Source: Bugula neritina
Taxonomy: Eukaryota > Animalia > Bryozoa
Direction: 5' to 3'
Length of the DNA: 11,983 nt
Assembly: GCA_964035545.1 (NCBI GenBank)
Contig: CAXIUT010000011.1
Location: 1-11,983, forward strand
The position numbers and the translations under genes were made by a program. The notes under the pieces are model-generated. The model was not told where the DNA came from. It made no database searches and saw only the letters and a program-made list of their open reading frames with translations. Positions within the stretch are counted from its first letter, which is position 1. Each line of letters starts with the position of its first letter. Below are positions 1-11,983 of the stretch, piece by piece.

Positions 1-83
1 CCCAACCCCAACCCCAACCCCAACCCCAACCCCAACCCCCAACCCCAACCCCAACCCCAACCCCAACCCCAACCCCAACCCCA
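1..83. repeat. Left telomere, (CCCCAA)n
   Basis: About 14 tandem CCCCAA units from base 1, with one C5 variant. This is the Tetrahymena-type ciliate telomere repeat. Confidence 0.98.
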
Positions 84-125: not shown

Positions 126-547
126 TATTTTATATTTAATATTCTTTCAATCAACAGTATTGTCTGATTTGAGTAGTATATTATCCTTTTAGAATGATAG
201 AGAAGATCAATATGAAATAACGGCTTTCTTCTAACTTAATCTCCAGCCATTTTCTATCATAGATCATTCTAACAGATTCAAAGTGGCATTTGTTTTTCAG
301 AAATGATCTCTGCTTGCTTTTTTCTATTCTATTTAAATTATTAAGTCTATCTTATTCTTCTTGATATTTTAAATTCAAAATATCTCCATCTCCATCTCCC
401 TACACTCCTCTACCAGTTGACAAAAACATTAAATAAGCTTTTTCCTCTTTTTTGTATTTTATTTTTTCAATGAAAAGGTTTCTCTGAAACAGTCAGGTAT
501 TAATCAGTCGTTTTTGAATAGTGGTTATAATATAAATCAGTTGAAGA

Positions 548-2507
548 ATGGGAACAAAAGACAACAAAGACGACGATAAAGAGCCAATCGACGTCTCAGA
601 ACTATAAAATGGACCTCTTACTGAAGCCAACAGGGAATGCCGTGATGTTTTATGCTGCCTTCTGTTCGTTGCAGGCATCATTGCTATGATTTATCTCTCA
701 GCCACAGCCTATTCGACTGGAGACCCTTACAAAATTTACAGAGGAATCGATCAAAACGGCAAAGAGTGTGGAAAGATGGATGATGCTATCTATTCACAAT
801 TTCCTTTTCTCTACTTCACCAATCCTTTTGAAAACATTTCCAAAAGAGCATGCGTCAAAACTTGTCCCGTTTATAATTCAGGCAGCAACTCTGTTTCTGC
901 TATCGAATGCGCCGTTCCTGCAGACTGCAACTCTGATACTTATCATGTTTAATACAAAGACGATGGTACGAGAACCGATGGCAGCAGTGCTGATCCAGCT
1001 TCTGGTAACGTACTGGGTTACGATACTACATTAGTTCTCGACAGAGTATGTATTCCCAATTCTAACATGTTTACAACGGTATTCAGTTCTTCAAGCGAGT
1101 CGATGAAAAATGCACTAGATGAAGGCTACCTTGCTGACTTCATCCAAGATATAAAAAATGTAAAATAGATGATATTTAGAATTGGGTGTGGATTCTAGCA
1201 GCGGTGGGAATGTGCGTGGTAATTTGCTTTATGTTCATGTTTTTATTGAAATGTTTGGCCGGATGTATCGTCTGGGTTTCACTCTTTGGAATTATGTTCT
1301 TGTTCATCGGGATGGGATTGATCTTCCTCTACAATGCAGGAAAGTTAGGGGATGTTAGTGAACAAGCTACCTACCTCGGAGTACCAGCTACCAACACTGG
1401 CAGTAACTAAGCCCTTGGATGGACCTGTATTGGTGTTGGCTGCTTCTTCTTTATTGTTATCCTATGCTGCTGCAATCGAATCAGATTGGCTGTTGCCATC
1501 TGTAAATCAGCAGGACAGTTCGTTGCTAGTGTATGTACAGTCATTCTGGTCCCAATCTTCCAGGCTCTCTTCGCTTTCGCATTATGGGGAGGAGCTCTGG
1601 TCGCTATGGTCTACTTGGTCTCAGCTGCAACTTTTGTAGTGGCTAGTAATACAGACTATTTTACTTCTCTTGAATCTTTTACAGACTAAAAGCTGATAAG
1701 ATTTTATGTTTTTATTTTTCTGACTTTGTGGTGTAATGCCTTCCTTGCAGCAATGACGATTTTCATCATAGCATCAGCTACTTGTATGTGGTATTATTCT
1801 CATGCTCCAGGAAGCGAGCTAGCATTTCCTATTTGGCGTTCTTACAAAATGGTTTTCCGGTACTGATGGTATAATATAGTTATCACTGGGGAAGTCTTGC
1901 TTTTGGGGCTCTTTTGCTGGCTATTGTTCAATTTTTGCAGCTAATGGTCTAGCTATTCAAGAGGACAGGCTGAGGCCCAGAATAACAAATGTATGTAATA
2001 TGTTTTAAAATGTATTCAATGTTGTTTAGCATGCGTGGAGTGTATAGTAAAATTTATAAACACTCAAGCTTATATTCAAATAGCTCTTCGAGGTAAAAAT
2101 TTTTGTTATGCTGCTAAAGATGGTTTCTAGCTAGCTTGGTCAAATCCTTTGAGATTCGCAATAGTTGGAGGTATTGGTTCAGTAATCATGTTTTTGGGCA
2201 AGATAATGATCGCCCTATCAACAGCTTTTCTTTTTTATTTGTTGGTTACCTATGTGAAATCAATTCGTTAAGGATATACTGAACCTATGTTACAAGTGGT
2301 GGTAAAATTTTATTAATTTAGTTGGTGGGGGTGATTGCCTATTTGATCGGTGCATTGTTTATGTCTGTGTATTCAGTTGCAATGGATGCTTTGCTGCAGT
2401 GTTTCATTGTTGATTAGATGAACTCGAAGGGAAAGAGAGCTAAATGGGCTCCAGCTGATCTAGCTGATCTTATGGATACTGAAAATTAAAATAAGATTGA
2501 TTTATGA
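548..2507 (+). CDS. Choline transporter-like protein (CTL/SLC44 family), ~632 aa; 3 introns; one +1 frameshift near 1960-1971
   Basis: With TAR=Glu the exons are 548-1159, 1180-1859, 1880-2301 and 2322-2507, ending at TGA 2505-2507. Family motifs: NRECRDVLCCLLF, GDPYKIYRGIDQNGKECG, KRACVKTCP, NRIRLAVAI, FRYHWGSLAFGA, CIQCCLACVECIVKFINTQAYIQIALRGKNFCYAAKDGF, AMDALLQCFIVDE, plus multiple hydrophobic TM segments. The exons sum to 1900 nt (3n+1), so one extra base is present. Confidence 0.93.
1160..1179 (+). other. Spliceosomal intron, 20 nt
   Basis: GTAAAATAGATGATATTTAG; removal joins DIKN|NWVWIL in frame. Confidence 0.9.
1860..1879 (+). other. Spliceosomal intron, 20 nt
   Basis: GTACTGATGGTATAATATAG; removal eliminates an in-frame TGA and restores the conserved FRYHWGSLAFG. 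Confidence 0.93.
2302..2321 (+). other. Spliceosomal intron, 20 nt
   Basis: GTAAAATTTTATTAATTTAG; removal joins QVV|LVGVIAY into the frame carrying LLQCFIVDE. Confidence 0.9.
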
Positions 2508-4034: not shown

Positions 4035-5137
4035 ATGAAAGGACCTGGTGGTAATGACCCCAATCATCCTGACAACTTCGACCCGTACTACCTCTTATAT
4101 CTAGTGTAACTAAGATGCCTCCCATGCACAAGGGCCAACATCATTAAACCGACCATCATCATAAGAACTTTGATCCTCTTCCCTGGTAGGGATATTTCGA
4201 CTAGCTTCTCTACTTATCTGATGTATTTTAGTTTTAATGTAAGGGTACGTCTGTTTTTCGAGCTGGTAGTGATGGAGCCATGTTTTTATGTATCCATGGA
4301 GCTGGGCATAGTGCTTTAAGTTTTGCTACTCTTGCCAGAGAAGTTAGACATTTTGGAACAGTGCTGGCTTATGACTTGAAAGGCCATGGACATTCTAAAA
4401 AATAGGTAGGAGATGGAGACTATTCTATTGAAACATTGAACGCTTAAGCTATATAAGTGATAAAGGAATTGATGCAGAGATATCCTGATAAGAATGTGGT
4501 GGTGGTTGGACATTCTTTGGGAGGGTCGATTGCTTGTAGAGTAGTAGATATCTTAACTAATGTCTAAAAGATTTAGAGAATAGTCGGATGTATTGTCATT
4601 GATGTAGTTGAAGGAACAGCTATTTAAGCTCTACCTTTTATGAACCAAATCATCATGGATAGACCCAATCATTTCGATACTTTACACAATGGTATAAAAT
4701 GGTGTTACAATTCTTGTACAGTACGTAAGTTGTAGTCAGCTAGGGTGTCGATGCCAGGTCAATTGGCTAAAATACAGGTGAATGGAAATGAGTGTTGGAG
4801 TTGGAGAGTGGACCTCAAAGCGACTGAAAAATATTGGATGGGGTGGTTCAAAGGACTATCACAGATATTTTTGAATATGCATGTTCCAAAAATACTAATA
4901 ACTGCTTAAAAGGAACGAATGGACAAGGAGCTGACGATAGCACAGATGCAGGGAAAGTTCAAGGTAGTAGTTATCCATAATGTTGGTCATAGTGTCCAGT
5001 AGGATGACTTTAGAGCTACAGCCAAGGAATGTTACAACTTTTTAAAAGATTTTAGAATTCCTATGACTTTAGGAGAGAAAGCTGAGAAGTAATTAGTTGG
5101 AATTGCTAATTTTCATCCAGGACTCAATAAATATTGA
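4035..5137 (+). CDS. PPME1: Protein phosphatase methylesterase 1 (PME-1, alpha/beta hydrolase), ~353 aa
   Basis: Exons 4035-4084, 4105-4222 and 4244-5137, ending at TGA 5135-5137. Motifs: FDPLPWEGYFD, CIHGAGHSALSF, YDLKGHG, nucleophile GHSLGG, IDVVEGTAIEAL, LESARVSMP, YWMGWFKGLS, RMDKELTIAQMQGKF, catalytic His in GHSVQED. Confidence 0.95.
4085..4104 (+). other. Spliceosomal intron, 20 nt
   Basis: GTACTACCTCTTATATCTAG; removal links the ATG at 4035 to the PME-1 frame. Confidence 0.85.
4223..4243 (+). other. Probable spliceosomal intron, 21 nt (in frame)
   Basis: GTATTTTAGTTTTAATGTAAG; AT-rich GTA...AG like the other introns. It is frame-preserving (would read VFEFECK), so splicing cannot be proven from frame. 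Confidence 0.7.
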
Positions 5138-5271: not shown

Positions 5272-6030
5272 TCATAAGACAGCTTTGAACTGAAGTACTT
5301 TTTGCACAATTAATTATCTTTTAGCTTCTCTTAATCTTACACTAGCAAATTATGGACTTAATATGGTTGTTTTATAACTTTAGTACCTAATTCTAACTAA
5401 TTTATGTAGTTATTCTAGTTCAGGCCATTGTTTGACTCCCCACAAATCTAACTCCTTCAATACAACAATAAATTTTTATATTATTTTGTATTAAATTAAG
5501 GTTTATAGTACTAGTCCTGATTTTTAGCTTAGAAGTTAGATTAATCTTTTTTATTGTTAAATTTTAAAGATCCTTTATGAAGATTTAGTGTTGGATGCTT
5601 CCATGGCTAGACTGTGTAGTAAGAGTCCTAGTTCTAGATGTGGATCTTAAGGTTGTTTGATTTGTACATATTTATTTTTTTTATGTTAGACGGGCTAGTG
5701 TTTTTTTGTCTAGAACTATTGATAGAGATCATCTTATTCACTTGAACTATTGAGTCCTTTTTTCCTTTTGTTGTGTCTTTTTATAGCAACAGCTAGTGAA
5801 AATTTGAGTCCTTTGTTTGTTTTAGCAGTATTTTCTGAGGAGAACTGTCTATAGGTATCTTAGGTGAAGGGGTAGATAAAGATTTAGTCGATGGTTGCTT
5901 ATGATTTTTATCCGTAGAAAAGTATTTTGTAGTTGTGTTGGTTGACAACAGATATGACTTTGCCTGGCCAATATGGGTAATTTTGACATTTGGCAAAGAC
6001 CATTTATCCTAATTTGTAGTTATTGGGCAT
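5272..6030 (-). CDS. PWWP-domain protein (putative chromatin reader), 252 aa
   Basis: Intronless ATG(6030)-to-TGA(5272-5274) frame under TAR=Glu. The N-terminus MPNNYKLGEMVFAKCQNYPYWPGKVISVVNQHNYKILFYGEKSEATI matches the PWWP consensus (GDLVWAK..GYPWWP...Y.V.FFG). It is followed by basic (KRHNKRK) and acidic (SSSEEDD) patches and a helical C-terminus. The supplied 5793..5996 ORF is the wrong frame. Confidence 0.9.
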
Positions 6031-6276
6031 TAAGTCAGAGGGATTATTATTATATGACTATCAATGGTTCTATCAAGAAAGCTACAAATTCAATACAATA
6101 TATTCATATTCATAATATCACTATGAATTTAACGATAATCGATGGATATAACTATGATCCAAAGGTATGAATATGATAGATATATACTATGAGATATATC
6201 TTCCTACAATATTTAATATATATTAATTTAAATTAAATTAATAGGACCTTTAATTGTAATTAATTCAAATTAAGTC
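6031..6276. promoter_or_regulatory. Putative bidirectional promoter region
   Basis: 246-bp very AT-rich spacer between the divergent starts at 6030 (-) and 6277 (+). Inferred from geometry only. Confidence 0.45.
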
Positions 6277-9144
6277 ATGGACTTGGATATATACACAACT
6301 ACCAAAAACTGGATCTTTACAGAGACTGATTAACTTGCTTAATAAAAGTTTTCACTCCTAGAATAAACCACCCGCTCCTCTGCACCTCAAAATTTCTACC
6401 ACAGTATCACAGCTCATATTCAGAACAAACCCTATTACATCTTGATTTTATTAAAAACAGTCAACTCTATCCCTTGCTCCAGACTCTCCCCAAAGCTGTT
6501 CTCCACCACGTGCACTTTGATTGCTGTGAAGATGAAGACTTTGTATTAATATGTTGATTCAGTATAGAGAGTGTGTGATAACTGATCCAAGAGTGTACTT
6601 GACGGCTGATAAGAAGGAGATGCGTATGGGGACTAAGGCCTAGGCTTAGAAAGAAGGATGGACATCTATGATAGAGGAGAGGAAGAAGTGGTAGAATGAA
6701 GAAGAGTTCGTGAAGATGGTGGCAGGGATAACAATGCTGAACAAGGCTGCATTGATGGAGATGTCATTTAAGCAGAAAGAGATGTGGGATAGATTTGAAG
6801 AGAAAATAACGAATTTTTTTGTTTTAGTTTTTTAATTGCATATGTTTAAAAAATATACTAAACATGTGCTGTTAAAATACATAAAAAACGGATATGACAG
6901 GATAGAGTTCCGAGCCTTTCCTGCTCGACTCAAATAATACGATTTAGATGGAAACTATGTGAAAGAACATGAGTAAAAAATGTACATGACTGCATTCGAT
7001 GAGGTTTATAATGAGGTAGTTATGCAGCATCCTAATTTTAGCTGTGGATTTGTCTTTTTTGGATTGAAAGTGTTTTCTCCTCAAATGAATGAGTAGCTAT
7101 TTACAAAGGTGTGTGAGTCAGAGTGGGACAAGACCATTGGACTTGATTTCGTTCAGCAGGAAGATTTGTATGGGTCACTCCTGGAGTATGATCCCATTAT
7201 CGACAAGGTGCTAGCTAAATTTCCTCATTTGGATTATAAGAAAGTCTACCATGCGGGTTAAACCAAAGACCATAGAACTCATAACTTAGAGATAGCTGTC
7301 AAAGCAGGGTCAGTAAGAATAGGTCATGGCTTCAATATCCTGCAGAGAATATAATTTTTGCCACATTGTAGAAATATTTGTTTCTAGAAGAATCCTTTAA
7401 GTAATTTGGTGTTAGGGTATAATTCTGATGCTCGATAGGCTTCTGCTCCTGTTTTGCTCGGCATGGGTTTCGCTGTAACTATCAATCCAGATGATCCTGG
7501 TAAATTTGGAGTAGACGATAGCACTGTTGACTACTTCTTGGCTGCCATTTCCTACAACTGGACACTAAGACATCTCAAGTTGATAGCCTATCACTCGATC
7601 AACCATGCTATTTGCTCAGAACATTTGAGGAATGGATTGCTAAAATCGTTTAATTTGAGATGGAACAAATGGGTAAAAGATTTTGTGGGAGGTGAACATA
7701 TTTAACCAGTACATCGATGGATTTAACCTGATATATTTAGAGGAGTTCGAGGATGGTCTTGGAGTTAAAAGTAAAGCAAAGCAATGGAAAAGTATTAAAT
7801 ATTTAGACAGGGAGCAGTTGATGCTCTTCCTGTTGATTTCTATCAAGGTAATTCTGATATAAAATAGAAAAGGTGTTAAGTCATTTGTAGTTTATGAAGA
7901 GCACTGAGTTATTTAAAAGGCTGTCAAGGATGCCAAAGGGAGTAATGCACCATGATCACTTCGATTGCAACTAAGACGTTTAATTTGTATTTTTTTATTA
8001 ATAATAGTACAAAAAATATGTGATAACTGATGGGAGAATTTATTTATCGAAAGATAGAAAGAGATTTAAGGTGGGAACAAGTAAGTAGGCAGAGAGTTAG
8101 GGATGGTGGTCTTGGAAAGTATTGAGATAATAAAATAAAACTTAATAAGAGCTAGCTACCCTTGCATATTCTTTGAGTTCATTTACAAAGTAAGAAATGA
8201 GTACAGTAGCCGGTAATTCTTCAAAATTTTGGCCTCCTTTCGAATAGAAAATAACTAATTTTAACAGAATATTATCAATGAGGGAAGTTTTTGAGAATTA
8301 TTCTGGACATGTCCTCAGGAAATTTATTCGAAATGGATATAGGAGGATAGAGTTTAGAGGTTTACTGATGGGATTGAAAGATTATGACAAAGAAGGTAAT
8401 TTAGTGAAAGAAAATGATTAAAAGTCATTTGTTTAAAGTTTCGATAAGGTTTATGAAGGAGTTAGAAAATAAAATCCTGGTTTTACTGTTGGATTTATTT
8501 TCTTTGGTTTAAAAGCATAGTCTGATGAATGGAACTAAGCCATGTTGAGAAAAGTATGTAATTTGGGATGGAAGTTAACTGTTGGCATTGATTTTGTCCA
8601 GGATTAAAACAAATACTCCAGTCTATCTCGCTACGACCAAATTGCAAATAAAGTTTTAGCTGACTACCCCGAACTATGGCTGCAAAAGTGTTATCACGCA
8701 GGTGATACTCGTGACCATCGCAACCATAACATCTAGCAGGCCTTGAAAGCTGGTTCTGTACGTATTGGTCATGGTTTGAACATAACTCAACATATTGAAA
8801 TCTAACCGTTATGTATGGGTAGGTGTTTTTAGTTATGTCCAGTATCTAATGTGGTGACTGCTAGTTCTGCCAGAGTGGACTTGAGGCTATCAACTGCTCC
8901 TATATTAATGGGCCTGGGAGTGCCAGTGTCTATTAATCCTGATGATCCTGGTAAATTCGGGTACTAGGATGGGAGTGTGGATTTCTTTTGTGCTGGAGTG
9001 TCGTTTAATTGGGGACTGAAGCATATGAAGTTGGTGGTTTTGCATTCGATTGGACATGCTATCTGCGGAGAGGGAGTACGAGTAGGGATGTATAAATGGT
9101 TTTAGGAAGAATGGGCAAAATGGGTGGATTCTTTGTTGGTCTGA
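6277..9144 (+). CDS. Tandem two-domain adenosine deaminase (ADA2/ADGF-like) protein, ~928 aa; 4 introns
   Basis: Exons 6277-6403, 6424-6542, 6563-7847, 7868-7986 and 8008-9144 total 2787 nt, with TGA at 9142-9144. Domain 1: LPKAVLHHVHFD, RIEFR, GLDFVQQED, YHAGET, RIGHG, FEKNPLSN, INPDDPG. Domain 2: MPKGVMHHDHFD, RIEFR, GIDFVQDEN, YHAGDT, RIGHG, FELCPVSN, INPDDPG. No in-frame TGA lies between the domains. Confidence 0.92.
6404..6423 (+). other. Spliceosomal intron, 20 nt
   Basis: GTATCACAGCTCATATTCAG; phase 1; needed to reach the LPKAVLHHVH frame. Confidence 0.9.
6543..6562 (+). other. Spliceosomal intron, 20 nt
   Basis: GTATTAATATGTTGATTCAG; phase 0; contains an in-frame TGA; joins EDEDF|YRECV. 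Confidence 0.92.
7848..7867 (+). other. Spliceosomal intron, 20 nt
   Basis: GTAATTCTGATATAAAATAG; phase 1; same position as 6404-6423 in the duplicated domain. Confidence 0.92.
7987..8007 (+). other. Spliceosomal intron, 21 nt (in frame)
   Basis: GTATTTTTTTATTAATAATAG; phase 0; same position as 6543-6562 in the duplicated domain. Confidence 0.85.
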
Positions 9145-10023: not shown

Positions 10024-11667
10024 TCATTATAAATGCAACTTTATTACTTCACACCACTATATTTTAATTTCTCCTTATAAGGCAATATGGCCATTATAAG
10101 AACCACCACTATTTGTACTTACTATTCCGCTTGAGAATTATAGAGTTAGTTAGTCATCGCCAAATATCAAATAGTCTTAGTCAGAACTCATCTGTCCTCT
10201 GTCAGATTTGGACTTCATCAAAATAAGACCATCTTTATTGGATTAAAACAAAAAAGAATTCTTCTTCTTATTTGTCTTTTCATCTTTTTGACCGCTAAAA
10301 CCTCCAAAAACTCTTTATCCTAGACTGCATATCACTAACACATCAGCTAAGTTACCAATTTGACGTTTGTGTTCTCTTGATAATATACTTTAAGTTCCAG
10401 GAAAACTCCAAAGCTGTGACAATTCTGATTGTTATCTTTTTGCACTTATTGCACTAAATATCTATTCAGAATGAGTGCAGTTGATTTTAGAAAAAAGACT
10501 ATCAATTGAGATTATATTTGGTTTTTGATTTTACTTGTTTTTGATTTTTCGTTCTAAAGAAGATAAGGGTTTTTATACTTTTAAAGATCTATATTATTAT
10601 TTTATCATTTACTAATGCTTTTTTATCTACCCTTTCTACTCCTAAGATTTTAATAATTTCTACCTTAATTGCTATAACTAAGTCTTTAGACATCTGTTTT
10701 TGTTTTACTACTTCTTTAACATAGATTATATCTTCTTTATTTAATTTTATTTCTTACACTTCATATCTCTTAACTCCAATATAGCATCATCTAACTCTTA
10801 TTACTTCTTTTTTATTTGACATATCATTTCATCATTCGACTTTTTTATTTTTTACATTTTTTTTTACATTTAATTTTTGATTTTCAGAGCTTATTGGATT
10901 TCTCTTTCTAAAAATTAAATTTTACTAATTAACTATATTTTTATTTTTTATTTTTATCTTCCTCCTTCCTTAATATGTTTCTGTACCTTTTTATATTCTT
11001 CTTAAAATTTCTTTTGAAACTCTTTAAACGACTTGAACTAGTCTTAATGCAGCTCTATCAATCCACTTTTATAAAATAAACCCATCGCATACATCTTTTA
11101 ATATATATTACCAAATCTTGCTACCATTCCTATTACTTCTTCTGGATGATTTTTATATTATTCAAGTTAGTTAAATTTTCCACTTTCCATTTTTGACAAA
11201 AATTTGCTGATAATCTAAGATAAACTGACTGTCTTTCGACTATCTTTCGTATTCTATTTTGTTAAAGTCTTTTTAAATACACTGCCTTCATTAAACTGAC
11301 TGTTTTTCATTTTATTTAAATCTTCAGAATGGATTTCAGAAAATAATTGTCCTGCTTTAACACCAGTTATCATTTGGTTATTACTGGGGACAGTTTGGGT
11401 AACTTTGATCTATTTACTTTTTAGTTGACCATCTCCGATTATAATATTGATTACTCCTTTAGTATCTTTTGGATTTTATAGACACTCAATTATTTTTTGT
11501 TCCTTTTTAAATCTTTTATTATTTTTTCCATAGATGGTGATATCACCTGTGTACTCCTATAGTAATTTTTTTTTTGTAAGGAGAGCGATTACTCGAGTAA
11601 AAGTGTGATGTTCCTAGAATTTAACTTAGCAACGATGACCACCATTAATTGACAAATGCAATTCCAT
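10024..11667 (-). CDS. Coiled-coil protein with C-terminal TLDc-like domain, 547 aa
   Basis: Intronless ATG(11667)-to-TGA(10024-10026) frame under TAR=Glu. It begins MELHLSINGGHRCEVKF and has a long E/K-rich coiled coil. The C-terminus VLVICSLGERVFGGFSG...NSFLFE...YLIFGDDELTL...IKIEWCEVIKL follows the TLDc pattern (FGGF, SFLF, FG..DL.I, EV). Confidence 0.85.
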
Positions 11668-11848
11668 TGGTTAATAAAGTATGACTTCTGATAAATAATA
11701 TTTGTATAGGTTTATAACTTTTGTAAGAATATATGATATAAAATTATTATTATTTTAGGATGATCATTCATTTTAAAAGTGATTTTACTTTATAAATTAA
11801 TTAATCATAAAATTAAATAATTTCAATTCATTTTAAAAAAATATCTTA

Positions 11849-11983
11849 TGGGGTTGGGGTTGGGGTTGGGGTTGGGGTTGGGGTTGGGGTTGGGGTTGGG
11901 GTTGGGGTTGGGGTTGGGGTTGGGGGTTGGGGTTGGGGTTGGGGTTGGGTTGGGGTTGGGGTTGGGTTGGGGTTGGGGTTGGG
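11849..11983. repeat. Right telomere, (TTGGGG)n
   Basis: About 22 tandem TTGGGG units to the end of the window, with a few G3/G5 variants. Confidence 0.98.

What the first reader, a model, noticed from the sequence alone, without database searches (positions are those of the whole stretch)
6277..9144. Head-to-tail fusion of two ADA2/ADGF-type deaminase domains in one polypeptide
Seen: two complete homologous deaminase barrels in one TGA-free spliced frame, joined by a short linker (...DFVGGEHIEPVHRWIEPDIFRGVRGW...). The N-terminus shows no obvious signal peptide. Established: ADA2/ADGF proteins are normally single-domain and animal ADA2 is a secreted homodimer. Inference: this is a covalently fixed, probably intracellular pseudo-heterodimer, an architecture I do not recognise as described. 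It is invisible with the standard code because TAA 7703-7705 looks like a stop.
Basis: partly seen in the sequence, partly recalled or inferred. Interest (0 to 1): 0.8.

Follow-up and report, generated by a model that had tools for sequence, protein, structure and literature searches.

The report
Two fused adenosine deaminase units
A ciliate that reads TAA and TAG as glutamate has one expressed gene that joins two complete ADA2/ADGF-type adenosine deaminase units into a single 928-residue, probably cytosolic protein; related ciliates keep the same layout, usually with one unit catalytically degraded.

Summary
Window 6277-9144 (+) is one gene: five exons, four GT..AG introns of 20-21 nt, 928 codons, and TGA 9142-9144 as the only stop.

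**Two units.** A profile built from eight ordinary ADGF proteins hits the product twice, at aa 14-457 (1e-60) and aa 481-926 (9e-62). The halves are 46% identical and colinear from end to end.

**Evidence that the fusion is real:**
- A cDNA-like public assembly (run X3) lacks exactly the four introns. One of its contigs runs unbroken from 7345 to 8308, across the junction.
- An orthologous metagenome contig (L001, 71% aa identity) carries the same junction. It has no Met and no TGA there.
- Synonymous sites between the two orthologs are saturated. The 32 junction codons still have pN 0.16, as low as in the catalytic core.

**Catalytic state.** Unit 1 has the full zinc and catalytic residue set. 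Unit 2 has Asp in place of the catalytic Glu (HAGD). The N-terminus has no signal peptide.

**Relatives.** Three further two-unit genes occur in organisms with the same code (L002, L003, L010). In each, one unit has lost catalytic residues, and it can be either the first or the second. A single-unit relative also exists (L006).

**Verdict.** This is a real, conserved and unannotated variant architecture of a known enzyme family. The idea that the two units form an ADA2-like dimer within one chain is an inference and was not tested.

The parts
6277..9144 (+). Whole gene, from start codon to stop codon; 5 exons; 928-aa product under the TAA/TAG=Glu code
6277..7687 (+). Unit 1 (aa 1-457): ADGF-type N-terminal segment plus deaminase barrel with a full catalytic set. 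HHVHFD 6504-6521; HAGE 7250-7261 with Glu315 = TAA 7259-7261; RIGHG 7316-7333; NPDDPG 7484-7513
   Evidence: PDB ADA2 3lgd hit with the 88-aa piece, E 4e-5
6404..6423 (+). Intron 1, 20 nt, GT..AG, phase 1
   Evidence: left out of X3 contig
6543..6562 (+). Intron 2, 20 nt, GT..AG
   Evidence: left out of X3 contig
7688..7720 (+). Junction peptide GGEHIEPVHRW (aa 458-468). It contains the sense codon TAA 7703-7705 (Glu463; Asp in the ortholog)
   Evidence: pN 0.135 against saturated pS between window and L001
7721..9141 (+). Unit 2 (aa 469-928): a complete second ADGF unit. HHDHFD 7948-7965; HAGD 8695-8706 with Asp783 = GAT 8704-8706; RIGHG 8761-8778; NPDDPG 8935-8964
7784..7786 (+). ATG = Met490, the only candidate internal start for a separate unit 2. 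The ortholog L001 has TTA (Leu) here
7848..7867 (+). Intron 3, 20 nt, at the position and phase homologous to intron 1 (..FYH|K.. versus ..FYQ|E..)
7987..8007 (+). Intron 4, 21 nt, at the position homologous to intron 2
9142..9144 (+). TGA, the only stop codon of the gene

Best explanation
Shown: 6277-9144 is a single spliced gene. Its mRNA runs across both units, and its 928-aa product carries two complete ADGF/ADA2-type adenosine deaminase units joined by a conserved 11-residue segment. It arose by tandem duplication of a whole ADGF gene, since intron positions and phases are shared by both units. The fusion existed before this species and the L001 organism diverged.

Inferred: the protein stays in the cytosol, because it has no signal peptide. 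Unit 1 (His71/His73, His312, Glu315, His337, Asp392/Asp393) is the working zinc-dependent hydrolytic deaminase, converting adenosine or a close 6-aminopurine nucleoside or nucleotide to the inosine form plus ammonia. Unit 2 keeps the metal ligands but has Asp783 in place of the proton-shuttling Glu, and evolves about twice as fast. Its main role is non-catalytic. The most likely role is as the permanently attached partner that replaces the second subunit of the ADA2-type homodimer, fixing 1:1 stoichiometry and freeing one unit to degenerate. That degeneration has gone to completion in the sister genes L002, L003 and L010.
For: - Splicing and a continuous cDNA-like contig 7345-8308 with no other differences. 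X3 covers 6318-9069 only, not the flanks.
- The junction sequence is identical in DNA-like contigs of a second study (X4, X5).
- Two full-length ADGF-profile hits. The halves are 46% identical and colinear, with pS about 0.8.
- Ortholog L001: 71% aa identity over 528 aa spanning unit 1, junction and unit 2; same introns; no Met or TGA in the junction.
- Between window and L001, aa 458-489 have pN 0.158 against saturated pS (unit 1: 0.136; unit 2: 0.295).
- Codon-position identity over the junction and the start of unit 2 is 0.58/0.85/0.43 for positions 1/2/3.
- Junction GC is 0.36, like the exons (0.37-0.38) and unlike the flanks (0.21-0.26).
- Catalytic-residue table: unit 1 intact, unit 2 Glu to Asp, L002/L003 unit B dead; L010 unit A degenerate, read from the translation.
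- No hydrophobic N-terminus in the ciliate clade.
- ADGF enzymes are dimers, and a dimer-interface mutation lowers kcat (PMC12273558).
Against: - No full-length transcript or protein was seen. Contigs cannot show transcript ends, and a contig across two genes does not by itself prove one mRNA.
- The ADA2 dimer-interface Trp (the W in GETxW) is Asp/His in both units, so an ADA2-like interface is not assured.
- I could not fold the read-through protein with the tools.
- Asp in place of Glu may retain some activity. That Glu to Asp in ADA1 greatly lowers kcat is my own recollection, not checked here.
- Unit 2's HAGD could not be checked in the ortholog, because L001 ends before it.
Confidence: 0.65

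Rival explanations
1. Two tandem genes rather than one: unit 1 ends in or near the junction, and unit 2 is transcribed or translated separately from ATG 7784.
For: An in-frame ATG exists at 7784. Contigs cannot show transcript ends. An open frame across about 30 codons is not improbable by chance.
Against: - TAA and TAG are sense codons here: they sit at invariant Glu columns, and 9 of 24 align to GAR in L001.
- There is no TGA in frame.
- The cDNA-like contig is continuous across the junction.
- The ortholog has Leu at the ATG position and no Met anywhere in the junction.
- The 21 residues upstream of Met490 are homologous to unit 1 aa 1-21 (fixed-register score 31, p<1e-5) and are under purifying selection.
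- Only about 95 nt would be available for a 3'UTR, promoter and 5'UTR, and they have exon-like GC.
Confidence: 0.04
2. A true fusion in which both units are active enzymes with different substrates or kinetics (a bifunctional deaminase), rather than one catalytic unit plus a structural partner.
For: Unit 2 keeps every metal ligand, the catalytic His and the Asp pair, with only Glu changed to Asp. It is under purifying selection (pN/pS 0.32). ADGF enzymes can shift substrate preference, for example the Helix AMP deaminase (PMC10358891, PMC12273558).
Against: In three sister two-unit genes, one unit has lost zinc ligands and catalytic residues outright. This shows that the conserved need for the second unit is not catalysis. 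Unit 2 also evolves twice as fast as unit 1.
Confidence: 0.2
3. The fusion is translated as one chain but cleaved in the junction into two polypeptides that associate as a heterodimer.
For: Nothing direct. The strongly conserved junction peptide could be a processing site.
Against: No protease motif was recognised. The junction is rich in aromatic and hydrophobic residues and is conserved like a folded segment. The junctions of L002, L003 and L010 are unrelated in sequence and longer.
Confidence: 0.08
4. Unit 2 is a decaying read-through extension with no function, created by loss of the stop codon.
For: TGA is the only stop in this code, so a lost stop gives a long extension. Unit 2 has a catalytic substitution and evolves faster.
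Against: Unit 2 is 460 codons without a TGA. Both of its introns are spliced. It is conserved in the ortholog with pN/pS 0.32 despite saturated pS, and the two-unit form persists in several lineages.
Confidence: 0.03

Closest known systems
Human ADA2 (CECR1), PDB 3LGD/3LGG, and the ADGF family in general (Pfam PF00962 + PF08451)
   Same: Same family by sequence. The 88-aa C-terminal piece of unit 1 hits 3lgd_A residues 402-482 at E 4e-5. Both units align to an ADGF profile over positions 53-516 of 522, including part of the ADGF-specific N-terminal region and the insertion after the first strand. The zinc and catalytic motifs HxH, HAGE, RIGHG and DDP are present.
   Different: ADA2 is a single-unit, secreted, glycosylated homodimer with a signal peptide. 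Here two units sit in one chain, there is no signal peptide, about 50 N-terminal profile positions are missing, and the interface Trp (W362) is absent. Unit 2 has HAGD.
Helix pomatia AMP deaminase / Aplysia ADGF chimera (PDB 9NTI-9NTK; PMC12273558)
   Same: ADGF fold and an ADA2-like dimer. This shows that the dimer is conserved across the family and that substrate preference can shift within it. There is a weak sequence hit (E 0.008).
   Different: Single-unit secreted proteins; non-covalent homodimers with two equal active sites.
Two-unit ADGF genes in metagenome contigs from organisms with the same code (L001, L002, L003/L004, L010)
   Same: Same clade (100/100 support), same TAA/TAG=Glu code, same roughly 20-nt introns at the same positions, same head-to-tail fusion without an intervening TGA. 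L001 is the ortholog.
   Different: In L002 and L003 the second unit has lost His, Glu, His and Asp (YQAG[VN], RI[AT]N, DY/EY). In L010 the first unit is the degenerate one. Their junctions are longer and unrelated in sequence. None is annotated as a double; the databases hold only fragments cut at TAA/TAG.
P0023, an unannotated 1366-aa protein from a Logan assembly
   Same: Two ADGF-like units in one chain (profile hits at aa 134-610 and 633-1221).
   Different: Only 34% identical in the best stretch. Hydrophobic N- and C-terminal segments. The catalytic motifs are replaced, and it probably arose independently.
ADAT2/ADAT3 (Tad2/Tad3) tRNA adenosine deaminase heterodimer (own knowledge, not tested here)
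   Same: The same logic of an active deaminase subunit paired with a paralogous subunit that has lost the catalytic Glu.
   Different: Unrelated fold (cytidine-deaminase type), separate polypeptides, RNA substrate.

Membership tests
ADGF/ADA2 subfamily of adenosine deaminases | Homology of the catalytic (beta/alpha)8 amidohydrolase domain (Pfam A_deaminase PF00962) | tested here: met
   Stop-free pieces give sub-threshold PF00962 hits (19.4 and 16.2 bits). A profile built from eight relatives gives 1e-60 and 9e-62 for the two units; the three of those eight that I scanned pass PF00962, and P0040 carries it in the precomputed list. ADA2 3lgd is hit at E 4e-5.
ADGF/ADA2 subfamily of adenosine deaminases | ADGF-specific N-terminal extension (A_deaminase_N, PF08451), which mediates dimerisation in ADA2 | tested here: inconclusive
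   Both units align to the ADGF profile from position 53/54, covering the ..LP..F...I..T.L(F/Y)..L..(M/L)PK(G/A) segment that lies within PF08451 in P0045 and P0024. The first roughly 50 profile positions are absent, and PF08451 itself could not be scanned on the read-through protein.
ADGF/ADA2 subfamily of adenosine deaminases | Zinc ligands and catalytic residues (HxH, HAGE, GHG, DD) | tested here: met
   Unit 1 has all of them. Unit 2 has all except Glu changed to Asp (GAT 8704-8706), which is confirmed in the cDNA-like and DNA contigs.
ADGF/ADA2 subfamily of adenosine deaminases | N-terminal signal peptide / secretion | tested here: not met
   Maximum 9-residue hydropathy in the first 35 aa is 0.48, against 2.6-3.4 in six ordinary ADGFs. 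The same holds for L002, L003 and L006. No dedicated signal-peptide predictor was available.
ADGF/ADA2 subfamily of adenosine deaminases | Homodimer with the ADA2-type interface | not testable with these tools
   The structure tools do not accept a protein read through TAA/TAG. The interface Trp of ADA2 is not conserved (PMC12273558).
ADGF/ADA2 subfamily of adenosine deaminases | Adenosine deaminase activity | not testable with these tools
   Needs an enzyme assay.

The most novel reading that the evidence does not exclude
Ciliates using the TAA/TAG=Glu code carry a whole family of cytosolic, covalently fused ADGF pseudo-dimers. One unit does the chemistry and the other, in either position, has become or is becoming a pseudoenzyme. 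This would be a natural demonstration that the ADGF dimer needs only one active site. Having TGA as the only stop may have favoured such stop-loss fusions of tandem duplicates.
Probability: 0.45. Interest if true: 0.55.

Novelty: new variant of a known kind. Interest (0 to 1): 0.45.

Why it matters
ADGF/ADA2 enzymes are known as single-unit, secreted homodimers. Why the dimer matters for catalysis is of medical interest, because dimer-interface mutations cause ADA2 deficiency. A naturally fused, signal-less, two-unit form, with sister genes in which one unit is catalytically dead, offers a ready-made system for asking what the second subunit contributes. It is also a clear case of how standard-code gene calling hides protein architectures in organisms with reassigned stop codons: public protein sets hold this family only as 60-190-aa fragments.

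Tried and rejected
- **Pfam on stop-free pieces** gave only sub-threshold A_deaminase hits. I replaced it with a profile built from eight full-length ADGF relatives, run in the sandbox.
- **Relic start and stop codons.** I considered that unit 2's ancestral start survives as ATGGATTTA at 7717, out of frame (compare ATGGACTTG at 6277), and that GGA 7688 is the mutated ancestral TGA. ATGGAYTTR occurs only three times in the window. However, the ortholog reads AGG TGG GTT GAA there, with no ATG, and the single-unit relative L006 stops two codons later. The idea stays speculative and is not used.
- **Origin of the two-unit genes.** The trees could not say whether all two-unit genes descend from one fusion. 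The backbone inside the ciliate clade is unresolved, with support 22-79.
- **Is HAGD conserved?** A word search with the 42-aa unit 2 piece around HAGD found nothing. The first related-loci query was too short.
- **How common are doubles?** A word search with a 581-aa ADGF, which admits candidates up to 1016 aa, returned 56 hits, none longer than 675 aa. This is weak evidence that doubles are rare among ordinary ADGFs.
- **Structure.** Prediction and fold search were not run. The tools take no protein read through a stop, and I did not type the sequence.
- **Earlier scan notes** hold no other deaminase finding for this genome.

Full report
**Setting**

The window is a complete macronuclear chromosome of 11,983 bp. 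It has C4A2 repeats at 1-83 and G4T2 repeats at 11850-11983.

TAA and TAG are sense codons and TGA is the only stop. TAA 7259-7261 is the Glu of the invariant HAGE motif, and TAG supplies the Glu of the conserved C-F-E-x-x-P-x-S-N motif. TAA/TAG codons of this gene fall on five columns where all seven ordinary ADGF relatives have Glu. Where they can be compared with the ortholog L001, 9 of 24 face GAA/GAG, 6 face TAA/TAG and 3 face Asp codons. This agrees with earlier scan notes s1-434102 and s1-434103.

**Gene model**

The model was first derived by reading the three frames. It was then fixed by public reads.

- Run X3 behaves like cDNA. Its contigs lack exactly 20 nt at 6404-6423, 20 nt at 6543-6562, 20 nt at 7848-7867 and 21 nt at 7987-8007. 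All four are GT..AG, and the contigs are otherwise colinear with no other differences.
- Runs X1, X4 and X5 keep these segments, so they are DNA.
- The spliced CDS is 2787 nt, giving 928 aa plus the TGA at 9142-9144.

**Two complete units**

The halves, aa 1-457 and aa 469-928, align from the first residue to the last at 46% identity. Synonymous sites between them are saturated (pS about 0.8; pN 0.37), so the duplication is old.

Introns 1 and 3, and introns 2 and 4, lie at homologous positions and phases. This means a whole gene was duplicated in tandem.

The tools take no protein read through a stop, so Pfam could only be run on stop-free pieces. That gave sub-threshold A_deaminase hits. Other evidence fills the gap:

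- The 88-aa piece 7439-7702 hits human ADA2 (3lgd_A residues 402-482, E 4e-5) and the Helix/Aplysia ADGF structures.
- I built a profile from eight full-length relatives returned by the representatives search. The three I scanned all hit PF00962, and two of them also hit PF08451.
- That profile matches the window protein twice: aa 14-457 (1.1e-60) and aa 481-926 (8.6e-62). Each match covers profile positions 53-516 of 522.

**Is the junction really translated?**

On its own, an open frame over about 30 codons is not significant. Four independent results settle it.

1. One X3 contig (923 nt) lies on 7345-8308 without a break and with both local introns removed. X3 covers 6318-9069 and nothing in the flanks. 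Contigs cannot show transcript ends, so this is supportive rather than conclusive.
2. The junction sequence is identical in DNA-like contigs of the second study (X4: 7541-8181; X5: 7578-7728), so it is not an assembly error.
3. The representatives search returned a 106-aa fragment, P0009, that reads straight through the junction.
   - Its contig L001 (1628 nt, from an ENA metagenome) is the ortholog: 71% aa identity over 528 ungapped residues, from unit 1 aa 156 through the junction to unit 2 aa 683.
   - The two local introns are at the same positions (20 and 22 nt), and the code is the same.
   - In L001 the junction has no TGA and no Met. The window's Met490 (ATG 7784) is Leu (TTA), TAA 7703 is GAT and TAA 7724 is GAA.
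4. Between window and L001, synonymous sites are saturated (pS 0.9-1.1), yet the 32 codons from the end of unit 1 to Met490 have pN 0.158. For comparison, pN is 0.136 in unit 1 and 0.295 in unit 2. Over the 60 codons spanning the junction and the start of unit 2, identity by codon position is 0.58/0.85/0.43.

Two smaller points agree. The 21 residues upstream of Met490 are homologous to unit 1 residues 1-21 (fixed-register BLOSUM62 score 31, p<1e-5). Junction GC is 0.36, like the exons and unlike the flanks at 0.21-0.26.

A separate unit 2 starting at ATG 7784 is therefore very unlikely.

**Catalytic state and location**

| Residue role | Unit 1 | Unit 2 |
|---|---|---|
| Zinc His pair (HxH) | His71, His73 | His539, His541 |
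| HAG(E/D) | His312, Glu315 | His780, **Asp783** (GAT 8704-8706) |
| GHG His | His337 | His805 |
| Asp pair (DD) | Asp392, Asp393 | Asp862, Asp863 |

Unit 1 has the full set. Unit 2 differs only by Asp in place of the catalytic Glu, and this is seen in the cDNA-like and DNA contigs alike. This agrees with note s1-434146.

The N-terminus is acidic with no hydrophobic stretch. Maximum hydropathy is 0.48, against 2.6-3.4 in six ordinary ADGFs, so the protein is probably cytosolic.

**Relatives**

The closest database entries are 60-190-aa fragments, because gene callers stopped at TAA/TAG. Fetching their contigs shows the following:

- **L003** is a complete two-unit gene of about 923 aa ending in TGA. 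**L002** is a two-unit gene cut by the contig end. In both, unit A is intact and unit B has lost the zinc His, the Glu, the catalytic His and the Asp pair.
- **L010** is a two-unit gene with the polarity reversed. Unit A is degenerate (LHNVF, INFGDSG) and unit B is intact.
- **L006** is a single-unit gene that ends with TGA just after ..WVKCFLDG. **L005** also ends with TGA after its unit.
- All use TAA/TAG as Glu and have roughly 20-nt introns at the same positions.

In trees, all these units form one clade (100/100) apart from ordinary ADGFs. Window unit 1 pairs with L001 unit 1 (100/97) and window unit 2 with L001 unit 2 (98/94). The deeper order is unresolved, so I cannot say whether there was one fusion or several.

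Outside this clade, one unannotated 1366-aa protein (P0023) has two degenerate ADGF-like units. A word search with a 581-aa ADGF found no other long relatives among 56 hits. Three literature searches found no description of a two-unit ADGF.

**How it most likely works**

Shown: one gene, spliced; a conserved two-unit open reading frame; unit 1 catalytically complete; unit 2 altered at the catalytic Glu; no signal peptide.

Inferred: unit 1 is the working deaminase. Unit 2 acts mainly as a built-in partner that replaces the second subunit of the ADGF dimer. The reasoning has four parts.

- ADA2 and molluscan ADGFs form the same homodimer, with about 80 N-terminal residues making the contact, and an interface mutation (W362G) lowers kcat (PMC12273558).
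- In three sister genes one unit is catalytically dead yet retained.
- The junction and unit 2's N-terminal segment are the best-conserved part of unit 2.
- Unit 2 evolves twice as fast as unit 1 but remains constrained.

Against this, the interface Trp is absent from both units, and I could not fold the protein. A bifunctional enzyme with two different active sites remains a fair rival.

**Verdict**

It is a new domain architecture of a known enzyme family. It is conserved and recurrent in one ciliate group, and hidden from databases by the genetic code. Fusion of a tandem duplicate of a homodimeric enzyme is a familiar evolutionary route, so the surprise is moderate.

Noticed in passing
window 1-83 and 11850-11983: C4A2 and G4T2 telomere repeats at both ends. 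The window is an entire 12-kb multi-gene macronuclear chromosome.
   Followed up: partly
window 545-2500 (+) and 4073-5134 (+): Neighbouring genes. Stop-free pieces hit Choline_transpo (PF04515; 33 and 28 bits) and alpha/beta-hydrolase or lipase families (GHSLGG motif). The ORFs at 5275-6060 (-) and 10027-11763 (-) gave no Pfam hit on their pieces.
   Followed up: partly
window 6029, 6269, 9144: The 9-mer ATTAAGTCA occurs three times on the + strand and never on the - strand. One copy ends directly before the start ATG 6277, and one overlaps the last base of the stop TGA 9142-9144. It could be chance, a regulatory motif or a duplication scar.
   Followed up: no
window 7717-7725: ATGGATTTA, out of frame with the fusion ORF, resembles the gene's own start ATGGACTTG at 6277. 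It may be a relic of unit 2's start codon, but the ortholog has no ATG there.
   Followed up: partly
window 7480-7512: Other contigs in runs X1 and X5 match only this 33-nt stretch, which codes INPDDPGKFG, and then diverge. This suggests at least one more ADGF paralog in the same organism.
   Followed up: no
L010 4820-4960: After the intact unit B, the ORF continues about 45 aa (..EWPKRSATIESSKIHQEASKRLQAVPSNF..) in a pattern like the N-terminal segment of another unit, up to the usual intron position, and then stops. P0013/L009 has a similar tail. It may be a remnant of a lost third unit or a retained docking helix.
   Followed up: no
P0023 (Logan assembly, 1366 aa): An unannotated protein with two degenerate ADGF-like units (aa 134-610 and 633-1221) and hydrophobic N- and C-terminal segments. 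It appears to be an independent tandem ADGF-like architecture.
   Followed up: partly
runs X1/X2 versus X3-X6: Runs filed under two different organism labels and two different studies carry this gene with no sequence differences. The labels probably refer to the same species or strain.
   Followed up: no
L005 662-1006: A relative 55% identical to unit 1 has RIGDG in place of RIGHG (catalytic His changed to Asp) and ends with TGA right after its unit. This is another catalytically altered family member.
   Followed up: no
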